Below are positions 1 through 64,000 of a stretch of 64,000 bases of DNA, in pieces. The notes under the pieces were generated by a model. The model saw nothing but the letters and a program-made list of their open reading frames with translations. It was not told where the DNA came from and did no database searches. Positions within the stretch are counted from its first letter, which is position 1; every line of letters starts with the position of its first letter. The stretch is from Octopus bimaculoides (Eukaryota): the NCBI RefSeq assembly GCF_001194135.2, contig NC_069005.1:23573150-23637149 (forward strand), given 5' to 3'. The position numbers and the translations under genes are program-made.

Positions 1-72
1 CCTCACGTGGTATTGATGTTCACATGGTCAAAATTAACGTGAGTTATTTAGACATTAACAAATTTATTAGAA

Positions 73-136
73 TATTTAGCTGAAGATCAGAATAGAGTAT
101 TATGTACTCTTAACTGTGAAACAATTGTACTAAATT
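73..136 (+). ncRNA. Type I hammerhead ribozyme motif (probable Penelope pLTR/retrozyme)
   Basis: Core CTGAAGA at 80-86 and GAAA at 118-121. Stem III is A121-T128 and C122-G127 around the palindrome ACAATTGT, with a GUA cleavage triplet at 127-129. Stem I is a perfect 6 bp (ATTTAG 74-79 / CTAAAT 130-135). Stem II is CAG/CTG plus AGAGTA/TACTCT, with a T.T mismatch next to the core. Folded by eye. Confidence 0.8.
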
Positions 137-399
137 AACTAAAGGCAAGTGTTTTTTACTCTTCTCTATTGTTTTTTGTTCTGTGTGTATCAAAAATATC
201 GCTATCAATCTGGAGTAATAATTTGTAGTTTTGAAATCAGTAGTTCTTTGACTGCTATTTCTGAATTCTCAGTATGTTGGAGAAGCAGGTTACTGTCAAT
301 CCCTATATATTTATGTTTATACTTGCTAAAATATGTAAATATACACACATATATATACACTGGCACTCTGTTAGTTATGATGATGAATATTCTGGTCGA

Positions 400-9449: not shown

Positions 9450-10094
9450 GCAGACAAATCACAAATACCAAGATGGCCCTGCTTGATCTGTAGAAAAGGC
9501 ATAGGTAGAAAGTTCATAAAATGCACCCTGTGTAAGCTTTGGACACATAAGAGTTGCAGCAATATCAGAAGAAAGTTAACAAGGAAAATAGCTTTTGTGT
9601 GTAGAAACTGCACAAGTAGAATAAACACTGAAAATAGACCCTATCAACTGCCAATGGGGTAAGCTAGAGGTAGTAGATAGCTTCCGTTACCTAGGTGACA
9701 AGTTAGTAGCAGAAGTGGATGCTCTGAGAGCATAGCTGTGAGAATAAGATTAGGCTGGGCAAAGTTCAGAGAGCTCCTACCTCTGAAAGGCAGATTGTAT
9801 GATGTCTGTGTGCAAACAGCCATGCTACACGGCAGTGAAACATAGGCTGTGACAGCTGAGGACATGCATAGGCTTGAAAGAAATGAAGCCAGTATGCTTT
9901 GCTGGATGTTCAATGTCAATGTGCATGTTCAACAGAGTGTAAGCATCTTGAGAGAAAAGTTGGGTATAAGAGGCATCAGATGTGGTGTGCAAGAGAGACG
10001 AATGTGCTGGTATGGTCATGTGATGCATATGGACGAGGACAGCTGTGTAAAGAAGTGCTGATCTCTAACTGTGGAGGGAATCTGTGGTAGAGGT
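9450..10094 (+). mobile_element. RTE-clade LINE ORF2 3' remnant with Cys-rich insert
   Basis: RLGWAKFRELLPL..KGRLYDVCVQTAMLHGSET*AVTAEDMHRLERNEASMLCWM..LREKLGIRGIRCGVQERRMCWYGHVMHMDEDSCVKKC, a typical RTE C-terminus. It runs into a gap. Confidence 0.9.
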
Positions 10095-14553: not shown

Positions 14554-15417
14554 TATTAAGGAGAGTCAAAAGTTTTGCAATATTTGCATACATGCTAGTT
14601 TGCAATGTGTGTACCATGTGACTAAAGTAGTTCAAGCCATGAAAGGTCCCACTCTGGGGTTGGTAGCATTGTGGAAGTCGTTGGTGCACATTGTTTCACT
14701 CTGTATGTGATCTGAAAGCCACACAAATGAACATGCAACGTAGTCTAATTCGAGAGCTCATGCTTTAGAAATTTGAACTGGGTCATAGCACTGCAGTGGC
14801 AACCAAAAACATTTGTTGTGCAAAAGGTTGATCACAGTACAGTAACCAGACGATTCAAGGGATTTCACCTGGGTTGCAAAAACCTTGATGATCAGGTAAA
14901 GTCAGGTAGGCTTAAAACCACGGATTCCAGGGCCATGCTCCAAGCCAGAGGCAAATTCAGCAAGCAGCACTTGTAGAGTATCAGGTGAGTTTGGCATCTC
15001 ATGTCGCAAAAATACCTGGCATTGATTAAAAGAAAAGTGAGCTCTTCTGCAACAATGCAAGACCTCAAACTGCTTTAACGGCTTGAAATGAAACTCCAGG
15101 AACTTGAGGGAATCAAACAGCTGCCGAACCTAGCATTTATAATCCCCTGGATTATTACCTCTTCTGATTCATGGCTCACTTCCTGCTCTCACAAAACTTC
15201 ATCAACCAAGAGGAGGTAGAAGCTTCAGTGAAGGAGTTCTTCATTTTGAAGGATAAAAACTGGTATCAGCATGGGATCAAAGAACTGGCAGAAAGGTGCC
15301 TTCAAACGGTGCCACATGATGGCCTCTACTTTGAATGCTAGGCTACTTTTGAAGGAAGTTGACAGATAAAGCAAATAAGTTACCGAAGTATTGCAAAACT
15401 TTTGTCTCAAAACAATA
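14554..15417 (+). mobile_element. Internally deleted mariner (Tc1/mariner) DNA transposon
   Basis: TIR-like GAGTCAAAAGTTTTGCAATA (about 14562) pairs with TATTGCAAAACTTTTGTCTC (about 15388), with TA flanks. N-terminal HTH remnant MQRSLIRELML*KFELGH..VDHSTVTRRFKGF..LDDQVKSGR. C-terminal remnant PLDYYLF*FMAHFL..EEVEASVKEFF..WYQHGIKELAER..HDGLYFE. Confidence 0.9.
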
Positions 15418-20258: not shown

Positions 20259-20509
20259 AATCTCATTTTAAATTTACTCCTAGGTCTCCTGCCAGCTGGC
20301 CCAGTTTGAAGAATTCATGTTGTAATTCTTTCCTCTAAAATTACAATGGTACGTCCATAGTCCCAGAGCTGTGACCTCTCAATGCAAAGAAGTAGCAGCT
20401 CAACCTGGAAAGATTCCCTGCTTTCCAAGCTATTTACCTTGTTGAGTGATGTTACTACAGAGACCATTTCACTCACTTGTATTCGTGATCCTATTTTTTC
20501 AATCATTAC

Positions 20510-20850
20510 CCAACATTCATGACCTCACATGAGGAGAAGCACAAAAACCAAATTGAAGACAAGTTTGACATAGTGCTACTTGGTTCATCAGAAGGTGACC
20601 TCCAGCATGCATTGAATGGGTTTGCTGCGAAGTGCTGCAAGGCAGGAATAAGAATTAGTGTTGCAAATACTGAGACATTGGTCCTCCCAAGAAAGTCTTT
20701 CCAGTGCACCGTTGATGTTAGTGGAATGTCACTAAGACAAGTGGAGAAGTTTAAGTTGAGCGATATTTACGAGTGATGGAAGTTGGGAGGCTGAATTGCA
20801 TGATAGAATTGCTGGTGTTGGCATGGTGATACACTGGCTCCAACATGTCC
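20510..20850 (+). mobile_element. RTE-clade (Rex3/Expander-like) RT remnant
   Basis: DKFDIVLLGSSEGDLQHALNGFAAKCCKAGIRISVANTETLVL..MSLRQVEKFK resembles the post-FADD segment of RTE RT. Confidence 0.8.
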
Positions 20851-30870: not shown

Positions 30871-31339
30871 CAACCCTGGAAGAATAAAAAGCTAAGTTAA
30901 CATGAGCAAGAGTTCAACAACATGCAACAGTCTGAAAATAATTACTTTTGATTTGGGAGCTAAGAATACTCAATGCTAGATAAAAAAAAAAAAAGGGACA
31001 GTTGTTGTAAGGGACAACTAAAAGGCATTGAGAAAGGTATGCTTTAAAATGTCCTGCCCAACCCATGCCAACATGGAGGAGCGGACACAACAATGAGGGT
31101 CATGGCTGGAATGCTTGACATGAAGGAGGGATGACTTCAGGCTAACCAACAATGATTGGTTTCTTTGACACTTTACTACACTCTCCCTTTCTCTCTCTCT
31201 CTCCCTCCCTTTCTCAAGTTATCTGTACCCACCTGCACTTTTCATTCAACTCAATCTCTCTCCCTCTTTCAGATCATCTGCGCAATGTGTGCATGTGTAT
31301 ATATAAACATGTCTATGTGTATGTACTTATATGCAGATG

Positions 31340-31952
31340 ACTGCGTTGATTATGAAACCATTGGTTTACCGTTAAGTTAAAAGTTTTTAAGAGGTTAGCT
31401 TTGAGAGTTGCATCCCCTTGCGATAGGTAAAATGTGCTTATTATAGTAGTTTGACTTCTGGAGTCCCTCTTAGCGTGAGGTGTTATTGTATAGTAATGCC
31501 CTTATATAAATTAAATATATTTATAGGGAAAAATGATGGTTTTTTTTCCCTTATGAGGTTTTTTCACGCTAACTACTTGATAAATTCTTATAAAGCCTAT
31601 TATTGAAGTATATATATATGTAAGGGATTATATATATATCGTCTGGCCGTAAAGCCTTTTCTGTTTGTTTTCCTGTCTTGCTTTTTGTTCGCCACTACAT
31701 TCCTCCATGGCTAGATTTAATTTGCATATACAAATTTAATCTGAGGTCCATGGGATGAGCCGTTTTAACGATGCGTCCTGCCCAAGCTCGTCGAAACGCC
31801 GGTGTTAAAACGTGGGTAGCTGATGAAGTAGAATGTTCTCTATGTGGCTCGTGTGTTTTCTCGTCTACGTTTGCTTGCAATGTCCTGTACCCAGATATGC
31901 ACCTATACATACAGGTGGATGTCGGTATGCACATACCTGTACGTATATATGT
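31340..31952. mobile_element. Unclassified dispersed repeat, possibly a Penelope pLTR, with a decayed hammerhead-like fold
   Basis: 8-bp stem CGTTTTAA/TTAAAACG (31761-68 / 31805-12) encloses C-GATG..GAAACGCCGGT. Adjacent hairpin AGATTTAATTTG/CAAATTTAATCT. Confidence 0.4.
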
Positions 31953-33544: not shown

Positions 33545-34468
33545 CACAGAAAACAGTTATATATACATACATGATAGAAGAACACCTTTCATCTTGAAAC
33601 CAAAGATGGTCCTTTTTCTTTTGGTGCTGACTGAAGTCCCTCAAGCTGCTTGCAGTAGATCCCCTTTGTTATTGTTTGGTTTGGGTTCAAAAGTTAAAAG
33701 TGGACTAAACCTTTAATATCCCACCAAACAGATAACAACACCTTACATGGTCGAAGACATTTAGCCTGGGGTGCCGGTGTTTCTCCTTTCCCTATCCACT
33801 GTCTTCAGCGTTTGACATTTTTATATGGAGAACCCATTTCTCATCACCAGTCACTATTTGATCCAAAAAAGGTTCATTCGTGAGACATGACTGCAAAGAA
33901 GAGCACATTCACTCTCTGCACACAATTAAACTCAGAAAGTTTGTGAGGAACCCATTGACCCAACTTGCAGACTTTTCCGATGGCATGCAGAAGTCACTGA
34001 ATGGTTGATTGACCAAATCCAAGCTTCTCTTTTAGTTCCTCAACAGTTACGGTGGGATTTTGCTCCACCAGGGTCTGCAGGACATCCTCGTCGAGCTCTA
34101 AATATCTTCCAAGATGAGGCTTGTCTTCTAGGTTGTAGTTTCTGGAATCACCGTTGACACTGGCTTACGCTCATTGTCCGATCCCCATATATTTCATTAA
34201 TATTCCTCGAAATTTCCATTACATTGTTGCCTTTATTGAACTCATAAAGCAAAATATGCTGAATATTCTCCTTTGTCACTTCCATTATAGCTTTGGAAAA
34301 AATAACTGTTAAAATCGAAATGCACTCTTCAAAACTTGCACTAAGAATAAGGACAAGGTAAAATTACTACCTACTTTTATAGCAAGTTGATGCAGGTAGT
34401 TTATCCCATCCCCCTCTGACTTTTAGTTCATGCAATTGAAAAATCGCATTATTTATGGGATGACCCTA
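33545..34468 (-). mobile_element. 3'-truncated mariner transposon with decayed transposase
   Basis: ATG at 34285: MEVTKENIQHILLYEFNKGNN. With frameshifts: DEDVLQTLVEQNPTVTVEEL..KLGQWVPHKLSE..DQIVTGDEKW..VWWDIKGLVHF. TIR-like TAGGGTCATCCCATAAATAATGCG at about 34445-34468. Confidence 0.92.
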
Positions 34469-59330: not shown

Positions 59331-59875
59331 CAATGACCTCTGACTAGATAAATATAGGACTGGGACCAATTTCATTGGAATTAAAACCAAATGAAGCAAT
59401 AAGGAATTGTTCCTTCAAGAACCATAATTACAACATACATGGCTGAGTTTGCCACCAGAAGCTTGCACACCAAATATTTCTGATATGGTAAGTATACAAA
59501 GGATAGTAATGGCTTAGAGCTTTGCATTTCAAAGAATGCAGTTGTGCATTCTAAAAATTCTTGAAATTTAATTAAACTCAAATTTGCTTGATGTTTTTAA
59601 TTGAATTCACATTTGTAATTAGTGTAGAGTTCTTGATGTCAGCAGAATAAATGGTGGCTTAGAATAGAGTCAGAAATATCATAATGTCTTTGGGGTGGAC
59701 CAAAATAATGCAGTACCACAGAAAACTCTGCTGCCACCATTTTCACCATCAACAACATTATTAGCACACTCATTCCCTGCTGTGGTTGTTATCATAATCA
59801 ACATCATCATTATTATATAATTACATATAGATATATACATCATTACATAGCTATTATATATACATATAGATGCAA

Positions 59876-60712
59876 ACATGGCTGTGTAGTAAGAAGTTTG
59901 CTTCCTAGCACATGGTTCTTGGTTCAGTTCCCTTGCACAGCACTGTGGGCAAACGTTTTCTATTATAGCCTTGGCCCAACCAAAGCCCTGTGAGTGGATT
60001 TAGTAGACAGAAACTGAAAGAAGCCCATCATATATAATCCTATATTATATTATAAATAATTAGAATATATTCAGTGCTGAATATCATTCTGTATAAGCAC
60101 ATGTTACCGAGATGCAACTGGATAAATTCAAATCTCTTTCAGGGATATATAATTGTGAACAAAAGTCATCGTTGTTGTGATGGCTACATCGTGGTAGGTG
60201 ATCCTTGTTTATTTTTATATATCTTGACCATACGTGTACTGATGAACAAAAGAATACAGGTTACTTCACAGTTTTTTCTGTATTTGATTGAGAAACCAGT
60301 GGTCTACCGTTGAGTTAAATGTTTTTAAGAGATAAATTTTGAAAAGCTGCATTCCCTCGCTTTCGGTAAATATGTTGCTTATTTTTGGTAGTTTTTTTAC
60401 TTATTTAGTCCCTCGATAGCATGAGGCATTGATACACAGTTAATGCCCTTTATATATAATTATATATATATACATATATATATAGTGTGTCTGTGTCTGT
60501 GTCTGTTTCCCCACCATCACCTGACAACTGATGTTGGTGTGTTCACCCCTCCGTAACTTAGCAGTTTGGAAAAAGACACTGATAGAATAAGTACTAGGCT
60601 TACAAAGAATAAATCTTGGGGTTGATTTCCTCGACTAAAACCCTATAAGGCAGTGCTCCAGCATGGTTGCAGTCATATGACTGAAACAAGTAAAAGAATA
60701 AAAGAAAAGAAT
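59876..60712 (+). mobile_element. SINE A split in its internal AT tract by a ~410-bp hammerhead-bearing insert
   Basis: 5' half at 59876-60035, 3' half at about 60450-60712. Confidence 0.82.
60232..60310 (+). ncRNA. Type I hammerhead ribozyme motif (probable Penelope pLTR/retrozyme)
   Basis: CTGATGA at 60239-45 and GAAA at 60292-95. Stem III is ACC/GGT with an AGT loop, with a GUC triplet at 60302-04. Stem I is GTA/TAC plus ACG/CGT with one bulge. Stem II is CAA/TTG plus AATACAG/CTGTATT, with an A.A mismatch next to the core. Confidence 0.72.
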
Positions 60713-61008
60713 AGAGTAAGTAGTAGACTTTAAAAAAAATAATAAGTACAGGGGCTGATTTGTGTGACTAAATCCCTTCAAAGTGCAGTGCTCCAGCATG
60801 GCTGTAGTCCAATAAATGAAACAAGTAAATGACAAAGAAGAGGTTTTGGGTTTTGTTTCTCTTTTGTCTGTCTTTTAGACATGGGATAAGGCAATGCTCA
60901 GAATCCTTTTACTGGATCCTGTGGAAGGGATGAAAGGAAGGAGGCAGAGGTCCTTAAACTGGAGACCCAATGACTAGGTGATGGGTGTTAAACCAAGGAA
61001 CTGATTAA

Positions 61009-63764: not shown

Positions 63765-64000
63765 CTACTGATGATATTGCAGATAACACTGATGATGATG
63801 ATGATGATGATGAATTATATAATGTTGTTATTGTTGTTGATGATGATGGTGGTGGTGGTGTTGTAGATAGTACTGCTGCTGATGATGGTGATGTAGACAT
63901 CACTGTAGTTAACGGTGATGATTTGGAAAGTGTTTAGGATGATGATGATGATGATAGTGATGGTGGTGGTGAGGTTATCTAGTGTTGTTGTTGATGTTGC
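63765..64000. repeat. (GAT/GGT/GTT)n trinucleotide tract
   Basis: Directly visible. Confidence 0.88.

What the first reader, a model, noticed from the sequence alone, without database searches (positions are those of the whole stretch)
60040..60450. Second hammerhead of unrelated sequence but the same architecture, carried by an insert inside a SINE
Seen: CUGAUGA..GAAAC-CAGUG-GUC with stems I-III at 60232-60310. Its stem II plan matches the motif at 73-136 (mismatch at 10.1-11.1, 3-bp helix, internal loop, 6-7-bp helix) despite a different sequence. It sits in a ~410-bp block that splits a SINE A at its AT-rich middle. Inference: a small mobile HHR-containing element (solo pLTR or retrozyme). 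Two independent sequences with one unusual fold hint at a lineage-specific hammerhead variant with a long stem II.
Basis: partly seen in the sequence, partly recalled or inferred. Interest (0 to 1): 0.85.

Follow-up and report, generated by a model that had tools for sequence, protein, structure and literature searches.

The report
Hammerhead-like motif in octopus retroposon insert
A 413-bp retroposon copy that landed in the TA-repeat of an octopus SINE carries a hammerhead-ribozyme-like RNA motif with an unusually long second helix; this is an octopus example of the known link between hammerheads and retroelements, and here it is probably a decayed relic.

Summary
CUGAUGA-46 nt-GAAAC-CAGUG-GUC lies at 60239-60304, with stems I-III spanning 60232-60310. 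The surrounding block, refined to 60039-60451 (413 bp), is a true insertion in the (TA)n middle of a tRNA-derived SINE. It is flanked by a perfect 9-bp duplication, ATATATAAT.

A second, 5'-truncated copy lies at about 31338-31503, with the same 3' end and 75% identity. The block is therefore a mobile, RNA-mediated element.

Motifs this good are expected 0.0002-0.0007 times per shuffled window; two are seen. However, Rfam finds no hammerhead at 60232-60310. It finds only a sub-threshold Hammerhead_1 match (22.7 bits, cut-off 34) to the companion motif at 74-135.

Position 10.1/11.1 is a mismatch in every copy readable here. Only one complete copy exists, so core conservation could not be tested.

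The anatomy matches Penelope-like element (PLE) tails or PLE-dependent retrozyme monomers:
- a sense-strand hammerhead 147 nt from the 3' end;
- a palindromic helix III;
- a conserved 3' hairpin;
- an AT-rich target and 5' truncation.

No RT/endonuclease partner could be reached. Verdict: a real insertion and probably a hammerhead-derived relic, a new member of a known kind. Interest is modest.

The parts
60039..60451 (+). 413-bp retroposon copy ('copy A') inserted in the (TA)n middle of a SINE. The sense strand is +.
   Evidence: Absent from 6 other SINE copies, which join head to body directly. Bounded by a TSD. A second copy shares its 3' end.
60030..60038 (.). Left copy of the target-site duplication ATATATAAT.
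   Evidence: D1, I7. The AAT that breaks the TA period is present on both sides.
60452..60460 (.). Right copy of the target-site duplication ATATATAAT.
60232..60310 (+). Type-I hammerhead-like motif. Stem I is 3+3 bp with a bulged U60235. Also present: the CUGAUGA core, an A.A mismatch at 10.1/11.1, an interrupted helix II of 3 + 7-9 bp, GAAA, helix III ACC-AGU-GGU, and GUC with the predicted cut after C60304.
   Evidence: the hammerhead fold is 2.4 kcal/mol above the MFE. Chance expectation 1.5e-4 to 7e-4 per window. No Rfam match.
60239..60245 (+). Core box C3-A9 (CUGAUGA).
60246..60291 (+). Helix II domain (46 nt): A10.1, CAA/UUG, internal loop, AAUACAG/CUGUAUU, 18-nt loop, A11.1.
   Evidence: helix II forms in both the MFE and the centroid fold.
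60292..60304 (+). Core box G12-A15.1 (GAAA), near-palindromic helix III (ACCAGUGGU) and the cleavage triplet GUC.
   Evidence: Self-duplex -12.2 kcal/mol. Kept in copy B as GAAACCAUUGGUU.
60425..60447 (+). 3'-terminal hairpin GGCAUUG-AUACACAGU-UAAUGCC, 4 nt from the end of the element.
   Evidence: All 7 pairs are kept in copy B, 3 of them through one-sided changes that stay paired only on the + strand (C-G to U-G, A-U to G-U, G-U to A-U).
31338..31503 (+). Copy B of the same element, 5'-truncated inside the helix II loop. It has the hammerhead 3' half only, and the same 3' end AATGCCCTT followed by TA-rich DNA. The 5' limit is uncertain (31325-31346).
   Evidence: blastn 75% identity over 167 nt, E 2e-21. 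nhmmer. Alignments. CM R1, the covariance model built here from copy A and M1, scores 15 bits on it.
73..136 (+). Companion hammerhead-like motif 'M1'. It has a 6-bp stem I, CUGAAGA, U.U at 10.1/11.1, CAG/CUG, a 3x3 loop, AGAGUA/UACUCU, GAAAC-AAUU-GUA, and a predicted cut after A129.
   Evidence: Rfam Hammerhead_1 gives 22.7 bits (gathering 34), E 8e-4 on an 85-nt slice.
59870..60029 (+). Head (tRNA-derived part) of the interrupted SINE.
60461..60730 (+). Rest of the (TA)n/(TG)n middle and the body of the interrupted SINE.

Best explanation
The block 60039-60451 is a dead copy of a non-LTR-type retroposon. Its RNA (+ strand) was reverse-transcribed at a staggered break in the (TA)n tract of an older SINE.

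The element is most likely the 3' tail (partial pseudo-LTR) of a Penelope-like element (PLE), or a short non-autonomous element that PLE enzymes mobilise, that is a retrozyme monomer.

Its RNA carries a sense-strand type-I hammerhead of the short, palindromic helix III kind. In an active source element, tandem or multimeric transcripts would pair two such motifs through helix III and cut after GUC (C60304). A 3'-terminal hairpin about 120-140 nt downstream would mark where the reverse transcriptase starts.

The copy in this window is solitary. It has a mismatch at 10.1/11.1 and a bulged stem I, so it is probably weakly active or inactive.

Shown: the insertion, the TSD, a second 5'-truncated copy, non-random hammerhead anatomy, and a conserved 3' hairpin.
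Inferred: the PLE partner, dimeric cleavage, and the role of the hairpin.
For: Insertion and retroposition:
- Six uninterrupted SINE copies show what the empty site looks like.
- There is a perfect 9-bp TSD.
- Copy B shares the 3' end and is cut short at the 5' side.

Hammerhead anatomy:
- All invariant core bases are present in the right order and the three helices are in place.
- The expected number of equally good motifs per shuffled window is 1.5e-4 to 7e-4, against 2 seen.
- The hammerhead fold lies 2.4 kcal/mol above the MFE.
- Helix III is near-palindromic in A, B and M1, with self-duplexes of -12.2, -13.3 and -8.4 kcal/mol.
- The 40 nt from GAAAC onwards are 90% identical between A and B, against 75% overall. 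The only two changes inside the motif fall at tolerated positions: the centre of loop 3, and H17 C to U.
- M1, which has the same plan, is picked up by Rfam Hammerhead_1 at 22.7 bits.

PLE-like features:
- PLE hammerheads have a long helix II and a palindromic helix III, and mostly occur as single motifs in truncated copies (PMC4209133).
- In the Anolis PLE, the endonuclease cuts AT-rich DNA and reverse transcription starts in a stem-loop about 90 nt 3' of the hammerhead cut (PMC11167929). Here a conserved hairpin sits 121-143 nt 3' of the cut, 4 nt from the element's end.
- Neptune and Naiad PLEs prefer microsatellite targets, (TA)n for Naiads, and octopus genomes hold PLE remnants (PMC8557442).
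- Retrozyme monomers dispersed in genomes derive from PLE pLTRs (10.64898/2026.07.22.740005).
Against: - Rfam finds no hammerhead at 60232-60310, even on a 101-nt slice at E<=10.
- The G10.1-C11.1 pair and the extra base between 9 and 10.1, both typical of PLE mini-hammerheads (PMC4209133), are absent.
- Stem I needs a bulge.
- Folding energy is not better than shuffles.
- There is only one complete copy, so no covariation or core conservation can be shown.
- No RT or GIY-YIG reading frame is visible in the window's ORF list. That list was read by eye and not scanned against Pfam.
- There is no pLTR or tandem arrangement at this locus.
- No further copy was found in 73 kb of three Octopus genomes.
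- AT-rich targets, TSDs and 5' truncation are also produced by LINEs.
Confidence: 0.55

Rival explanations
1. It is a LINE-dependent SINE-like retroposon, or the 3' tail of a LINE. It either carries a hammerhead, as the schistosome Sm-alpha/Sj-alpha elements do, or has a TA-rich tail that anneals to nicked (TA)n targets. No PLE is involved.
For: The TSD, 5' truncation and AT-rich targets fit LINE-type target-primed reverse transcription equally well. A 3'-terminal hairpin is also the recognition signal of stringent LINE/SINE pairs (own knowledge). The window holds LINE fragments but no PLE frame. Both copies are followed by TA-rich DNA, which could be the element's own tail. The imperfect match GCCCATC/GCCCTTT next to the TSD hints at microhomology priming.
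Against: There is no poly(A) or short tandem-repeat tail that clearly belongs to the element. No tRNA-like head was found (ARAGORN). There is no similarity to the LINE fragments in the window. In animals, type-I hammerheads with a palindromic helix III are tied to PLEs and retrozymes (PMC4209133, PMC7229834).
Confidence: 0.2
2. The hammerhead likeness at 60232-60310 is coincidental. A retroposon with a long hairpin happens to have CUGAUGA and GAAAC beside it, and only the motif at 73-136 is a true hammerhead relative.
For: Rfam has no match at any threshold. There is an A.A mismatch at 10.1/11.1 and a bulged stem I. My descriptors were written after the fact. Loose core-only matches are common, with 10 seen against 5.6 expected. 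One of them lies in a GAT microsatellite at 63879-63936. The conserved block in copy B runs 20 nt past the motif, so it need not reflect ribozyme constraint.
Against: Equally good motifs are expected about 1.5e-4 to 7e-4 times per window. A second motif with the same unusual helix II plan lies in the same 64 kb. Helix III stays palindromic in copy B. The motif lies on the sense strand at the distance from the 3' end seen in PLEs.
Confidence: 0.2
3. It is an active member of a lineage-specific hammerhead class with a long helix II, and it is functional at this locus, for example producing a processed or circular RNA.
For: The two motifs share the plan, with 97% of cells paired and 11 of 20 pairs differing on both sides in a hand-fitted alignment. 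A U.U pair at the base of helix II is compatible with cleavage in axolotl (PMC7229834).
Against: There is a single hammerhead in a solitary insert, so no unit can be excised. The copy is old, at 75% identity to copy B. No tertiary loop contacts are evident. The alignment was fitted to the fold, so the count is circular.
Confidence: 0.05

Closest known systems
Mini-hammerheads in the pseudo-LTRs and 3' regions of Penelope-like elements (Cervera & de la Pena 2014, PMC4209133; Frangieh et al. 2024, PMC11167929)
   Same: Sense-strand type-I hammerhead. Longer than usual helix II. Short palindromic helix III suited to dimers. Mostly found as single motifs in truncated copies. AT-rich or microsatellite targets. 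The insertion's 3' end lies about 100 nt downstream of the cut site, next to a stem-loop.
   Different: There is no G10.1-C11.1 pair and no extra base between 9 and 10.1. Helix II is far longer (46 nt) and interrupted by an internal loop. No RT/GIY-YIG frame or pLTR pair is linked to it here.
Non-LTR retrozymes of animals (Cervera & de la Pena 2020, PMC7229834; Li et al. 2026 preprint, 10.64898/2026.07.22.740005)
   Same: Unit size (about 170-400 bp), low GC and a type-I hammerhead with a 2-3 bp helix III and palindromic loop. Dispersed monomers exist. Axolotl HHR_Amex2 has a U.U mismatch at the base of helix II and still cleaves.
   Different: There is no tandem array at this locus. Canonical retrozyme hammerheads have a 4-bp helix II with loop 1-loop 2 contacts and reach the Rfam threshold. 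This one does not.
Sm-alpha / Sj-alpha SINE-like retroposons of schistosomes, which carry a hammerhead (own knowledge; cited in PMC4209133)
   Same: A short dispersed retroposon with an internal type-I hammerhead.
   Different: Those have a tRNA-like Pol III head and a canonical hammerhead. No tRNA-like part was found here.
Naiad PLEs with an 'HHR_half_core' (Craig et al. 2021, PMC8557442)
   Same: (TA)n target preference. Core halves CUGANGA and GAAA lie 35-50 nt apart (46 nt here). Old remnants are reported in Octopus.
   Different: No sequence comparison was possible because the consensus files are not held. In that paper the half-cores were not shown to form a hammerhead.

Membership tests
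Hammerhead ribozyme, type I (Rfam RF00163) | Invariant core: C3 U4 G5 A6 N7 G8 A9 ... G12 A13 A14 A15.1 ... U16.1 H17 | tested here: met
   CUGAUGA 60239-45, GAAA 60292-95, U60303, C60304.
Hammerhead ribozyme, type I (Rfam RF00163) | Three helices around the core, with open ends at helix I | tested here: met
   Helix I is 3+3 bp with one bulge, helix II is 3 + 7-9 bp, and helix III is 3 bp with a 3-nt loop.
Hammerhead ribozyme, type I (Rfam RF00163) | Watson-Crick pair at 10.1-11.1 (G-C in nearly all natural examples) | tested here: not met
   A60246 opposite A60291. Copy B has U at 11.1. M1 has U.U.
Hammerhead ribozyme, type I (Rfam RF00163) | Covariance-model score at or above the curated cut-off (34 bits) | tested here: not met
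   No hit at 60232-60310, even at E<=10 on 101 nt. M1 scores 22.7 bits.
Hammerhead ribozyme, type I (Rfam RF00163) | Self-cleavage 3' of H17 | not testable with these tools
   Needs in vitro transcription of monomer and dimer constructs.
Penelope-like element (pLTR / 3' tail) | Linked reading frame with a TERT-like RT and a GIY-YIG endonuclease | tested here: inconclusive
   None is visible in the window's ORF list, which was read by eye without a Pfam scan. The copy is 5'-truncated, so absence is expected. Source genomes could not be searched.
Penelope-like element (pLTR / 3' tail) | Sense-strand hammerhead with a palindromic helix III, about 100 nt upstream of the insertion's 3' end | tested here: met
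   The cut site is 147 nt from the end. ACCAGUGGU is near-palindromic.
Penelope-like element (pLTR / 3' tail) | Extra base between 9 and 10.1 plus a conserved G10.1-C11.1 (PMC4209133) | tested here: not met
Penelope-like element (pLTR / 3' tail) | AT-rich or microsatellite target, TSD, frequent 5' truncation | tested here: met
   This is not specific to PLEs.
Penelope-like element (pLTR / 3' tail) | Partial tandem (pLTR-ORF-pLTR) or inverted arrangement | tested here: not met
   A single unit at both loci.
Non-LTR retrozyme | Head-to-tail tandem repeats, each with a hammerhead | tested here: not met
   TRF and repeat scans find no array. CM R1, the covariance model built here from copy A and M1, finds no second motif in the insert.
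Non-LTR retrozyme | Linear and circular monomer RNAs with ends at the cut site | not testable with these tools
   Needs RNA-seq or northern data from octopus tissue.
tRNA-derived SINE with a hammerhead (Sm-alpha type) | tRNA-like Pol III promoter head | tested here: not met
   ARAGORN finds nothing in 59800-60800. This is a coarse test for a degenerate head.

The most novel reading that the evidence does not exclude
Octopus genomes hold a lineage-specific class of retroelement hammerheads. In this class helix II is a long interrupted stem (3 bp, internal loop, 6-9 bp) that sits on a non-Watson-Crick 10.1/11.1 pair. The class may be the folded form of the 'half-core' motifs, 35-50 nt apart, that were noted but left unexplained in Naiad Penelope-like elements. 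That would mean the supposedly hammerhead-less Naiad clade has ribozymes after all.
Probability: 0.15. Interest if true: 0.6.

Novelty: new member of a known kind. Interest (0 to 1): 0.3.

Why it matters
Hammerheads in animal retroelements are well documented, so one more example changes little. Its value is as a lead. Standard tools (Rfam, canonical descriptors) miss this architecture, yet two instances occur in 64 kb. If genome-wide copies keep the core and the long helix II, current counts of animal hammerheads are too low. It would also bear on whether some PLE clades truly lack ribozymes. The locus itself is also a clean, datable example of nested retroposition into a SINE microsatellite.

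Tried and rejected
Rfam:
- Rfam at gathering threshold on the whole window found nothing.
- Rfam at E<=10 on 400-500-nt slices found only low-complexity miRNA noise.
- Narrow slices recovered Hammerhead_1 for M1 only.

Searches for more copies:
- Protein-space probe with the insert's 79-aa ORF: no relatives, and the ORF is not on record.
- A 28-nt degenerate DNA pattern against metagenome contigs: 0 hits.
- A window LINE ORF used as a probe to sample more octopus DNA: no relatives.
- Octopus rhodopsin loci from O. vulgaris, O. bimaculoides and O. sinensis (73 kb): O. vulgaris and O. sinensis carry the same SINE family, but no locus holds a copy of the insert or of this hammerhead type.
- Look-ups of two more window ORFs, to extend the window: not on record.

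Within the window:
- nhmmer and blastn found only copy B.
- A covariance model built from both motifs (R1) found only A, M1 and the half motif of copy B.
- A dead M1-like hammerhead at 60077-60128 is suggested by an alignment (p about 0.03) but not supported by the model, so I do not claim it.
- Homology between the 3' parts of M1 and A is not significant (p 0.06 and 0.9).

Other:
- tRNA-like head: none.
- The supplementary consensus sequences of Craig et al. 2021 are not held, so the Naiad link could not be tested.

Full report
**Naming.** Copy A is the 413-bp insert at 60039-60451. Copy B is the truncated second copy near 31338-31503. M1 is the companion hammerhead-like motif at 73-136. R1 is the covariance model I built from copy A and M1.

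**What is there.** The window is octopod DNA. Its abundant tRNA-derived SINE recurs at 76-85% identity beside the rhodopsin genes of Octopus vulgaris and O. sinensis. At 60239-60304 the + strand reads CUGAUGA, then 46 nt, then GAAAC-CAGUG-GUC.

Numbered as a type-I hammerhead, the motif is:
- stem I: ACG-[U]-GUA (60232-38) pairs with UAC-CGU (60305-10);
- core: C3-A9 at 60239-45;
- position 10.1 is A60246 and 11.1 is A60291, a mismatch;
- helix II: CAA/UUG, an internal loop, and a distal helix of 7 bp (9 bp in the MFE fold) closed by an 18-nt loop;
- G12-A15.1 at 60292-95;
- helix III: ACC-AGU-GGU;
- H17 is C60304.

The companion motif at 73-136 (M1) has the same plan: CUGAAGA, U.U, CAG/CUG, a 3x3 loop, AGAGUA/UACUCU, and GAAAC-AAUU-GUA.

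**Is it an insert?** Yes. Six other copies of the SINE in the window run from the head (..GAAACUGAAAGAAGCC..UCG) straight into (TA)n/(TG)n and on into the body. In the interrupted copy, 413 bp (60039-60451) lie inside the TA tract, flanked by a perfect direct repeat ATATATAAT (60030-38 and 60452-60). The AAT that breaks the TA period is duplicated with the rest.

The repeat extends imperfectly for another 7 nt, GCCCATC against GCCCTTT. The second of these is the element's own end, because copy B carries it in a different flank. It may be microhomology used at integration.

**Is it mobile and multi-copy?** A second copy lies at about 31338-31503 (75% identity, E 2e-21). It shares the 3' end (..AGUCCCUC..UAGC.UGAGG...AAUGCCCUU followed by TA-rich DNA). 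Its homology begins inside the helix II loop, so it holds only the 3' half of the motif. A common 3' end with variable 5' ends plus a TSD is the signature of target-primed reverse transcription, with + as the sense strand. There is no tandem array and no second hammerhead in the insert.

**More than chance?** A loose type-I descriptor required the core, helix III of at least 2 bp, stem I of at least 3 bp, and helix II of at least 3 bp with 10.1/11.1 allowed to mismatch. It hits exactly these two places, against 0.033 expected per dinucleotide shuffle. I then also required the observed stem I (6 bp with one bulge allowed), the 4+4 palindrome at helix III and the helix II stability. The expectation fell to 1.5e-4 to 7e-4 per window.

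These descriptors are post hoc. Even a generous penalty for that leaves the pair unlikely to be random. The hammerhead fold is 2.4 kcal/mol (A) and 0.7 kcal/mol (M1) above the MFE.

Against this:
- Overall folding energies are ordinary (z +0.54 and -0.50).
- Rfam reports nothing for the window at gathering threshold.
- On narrow slices Rfam reports a sub-threshold Hammerhead_1 match for M1 only: 22.7 bits against a cut-off of 34, E 8e-4 on 85 nt, equivalent to about 0.6 for the whole window over all families.
- The motif at 60232-60310 gets no hammerhead match at all.

**What copy B says.** From GAAAC onwards, 40 nt are 90% identical between A and B, against 75% overall. Within the motif the two changes fall at the centre of loop 3 (G to U, palindrome kept) and at H17 (C to U, still cleavable). 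The stem I 3' strand is unchanged. Position 11.1 is U instead of A, and never C. The conserved block runs past the motif, so this is only mild support. The CUGAUGA half cannot be compared.

**Other anatomy.** A hairpin at 60425-60447 (GGCAUUG...UAAUGCC, loop containing ACACA) ends 4 nt before the element's end. All 7 pairs are kept in copy B, three of them through one-sided changes that remain paired only as + strand RNA. A second conserved pairing, UACCG 60305-09 with CGGUA 60365-69, plus a neighbouring helix with one compensatory change, would compete with stem I.

**What it most likely is.** The anatomy matches what is published for Penelope-like elements:
- Their hammerheads sit in the sense strand of the pseudo-LTR, have a longer helix II and a short palindromic helix III that works in dimers, and are mostly met as single motifs in truncated copies (PMC4209133).
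- In the one PLE studied in vitro, the endonuclease cuts AT-rich DNA. Reverse transcription starts in an AC-rich stem-loop about 90 nt downstream of the hammerhead cut, and that start site defines the genomic 3' end (PMC11167929).
- Neptune and Naiad clades favour microsatellite targets, (TA)n for Naiads. Octopus holds old PLE remnants (PMC8557442).
- Animal retrozymes are PLE-derived, and dispersed monomers are common.

I therefore read the block as a 5'-truncated PLE tail or a PLE-dependent retrozyme-like monomer, now a relic.

The PLE partner is inferred, not shown. No RT/GIY-YIG frame is visible in the window. I also found no way to search cephalopod genomes: the protein-space and pattern probes failed, and 73 kb of Octopus DNA fetched through the rhodopsin gene held no copy. 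A LINE-dependent SINE-like element with a hammerhead remains a serious rival. So does a coincidental likeness for this particular motif.

**Comparison and novelty.** The features called unusual have precedents. There is a U.U pair at the base of helix II in about 60,000 axolotl retrozyme hammerheads that still cleave (PMC7229834). Long helix II is known in PLE mini-hammerheads. The giant squid genome has 235 Rfam Hammerhead_1 hits (PMC6962438).

What has no described counterpart, as far as I could find, is the long interrupted helix II on a mismatch, seen twice here. In a hand-fitted alignment of the two motifs, 97% of cells pair and 11 of 20 pairs differ on both sides. The alignment was fitted to the fold, so that count is circular. 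The two sequences may also be distant relatives rather than independent.

Craig et al. noted CUGANGA and GAAA halves 35-50 nt apart in some Naiads and left them unexplained. The 46-nt spacing here fits that class, but I could not compare sequences.

**Verdict.** This is a new member of a known kind, a hammerhead-bearing retroposon, with a modest chance of representing a distinct variant class. It is probably inactive at this locus. Interest 0.3.

Noticed in passing
window 74-135 (+): The companion motif M1 is recognised by Rfam Hammerhead_1 (22.7 bits, cut-off 34) only when an 85-nt slice is searched. The same model reported nothing on a 400-nt slice or on the whole window, so the speed filters hide it.
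   Followed up: yes
window 60425-60447 and 31479-31500 (+): There is a conserved 3'-terminal hairpin in both copies of the element. Three one-sided substitutions all keep pairing through G-U, which points to an RNA-level signal on the + strand. It may be the reverse-transcriptase entry site.
   Followed up: partly
window 60305-60369 (+) and 31366-31430 (+): The stem I 3' strand UACCG can instead pair with CGGUA 60 nt downstream. The adjacent helix UGAG/CUCG becomes UAAG/CUUG in copy B, one compensatory change. This fold would compete with the hammerhead.
   Followed up: partly
window 60042-60128 (+) versus 43-136 (+): The 5' part of the insert aligns collinearly with the whole M1 hammerhead (CUGAAUA..GCAAC in place of CUGAAGA..GAAAC), with p about 0.03 by shuffling. 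It could be a dead M1-type hammerhead upstream of the main one. The covariance model does not support it.
   Followed up: partly
window 270-300 versus 60430-60451 and 31485-31503: The sequence 170 nt downstream of M1 ends in AAUCCCU followed by TATATA, like the ends of copies A and B (AAUGCCCUU + TATATA). This hints that M1 lies in a related element with the same target preference. The overall similarity is not significant (p 0.06).
   Followed up: partly
window 60023-60045 and 60445-60467: The direct repeat around the insert extends beyond the 9-bp TSD as GCCCATC / GCCCTTT. The second half is the element's own terminus, so this may be microhomology between target and template at integration.
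   Followed up: no
window 60156-60165 and 60243-60252: A perfect 10-nt direct repeat TGAACAAAAG occurs inside the insert. The second copy overlaps the hammerhead core and helix II. Chance cannot be excluded.
   Followed up: no
window 63879-63936 (+): A CUGAUGA...GAAA match with a strong hairpin lies inside a (GAT)n microsatellite. It has no stem I and is an example of a chance core match.
   Followed up: yes
window 9450-10058 (+), 42095-42845 (+), 20489-20773 (+): These are degenerate LINE reverse-transcriptase C-terminal fragments: two copies of one family with a Cys-rich finger, and one of another family. No relatives were found in the protein collection for 42555-42845.
   Followed up: partly
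window 14749-14973 (+), 34151-34363 (-): ORF fragments that look like N-terminal parts of mariner-type transposases. This is judged by eye only.
   Followed up: no
window 60700-60842 (+): A partial second SINE body directly follows the interrupted SINE (73% identity to its positions 121-259).
   Followed up: no
L001 19342-20534, L003 19326-20507; absent from L002: Two copies of the same SINE family lie head to head downstream of the rhodopsin gene in O. vulgaris and O. sinensis. They gave no BLAST hit in the orthologous O. bimaculoides locus, which suggests lineage-specific insertions.
   Followed up: no
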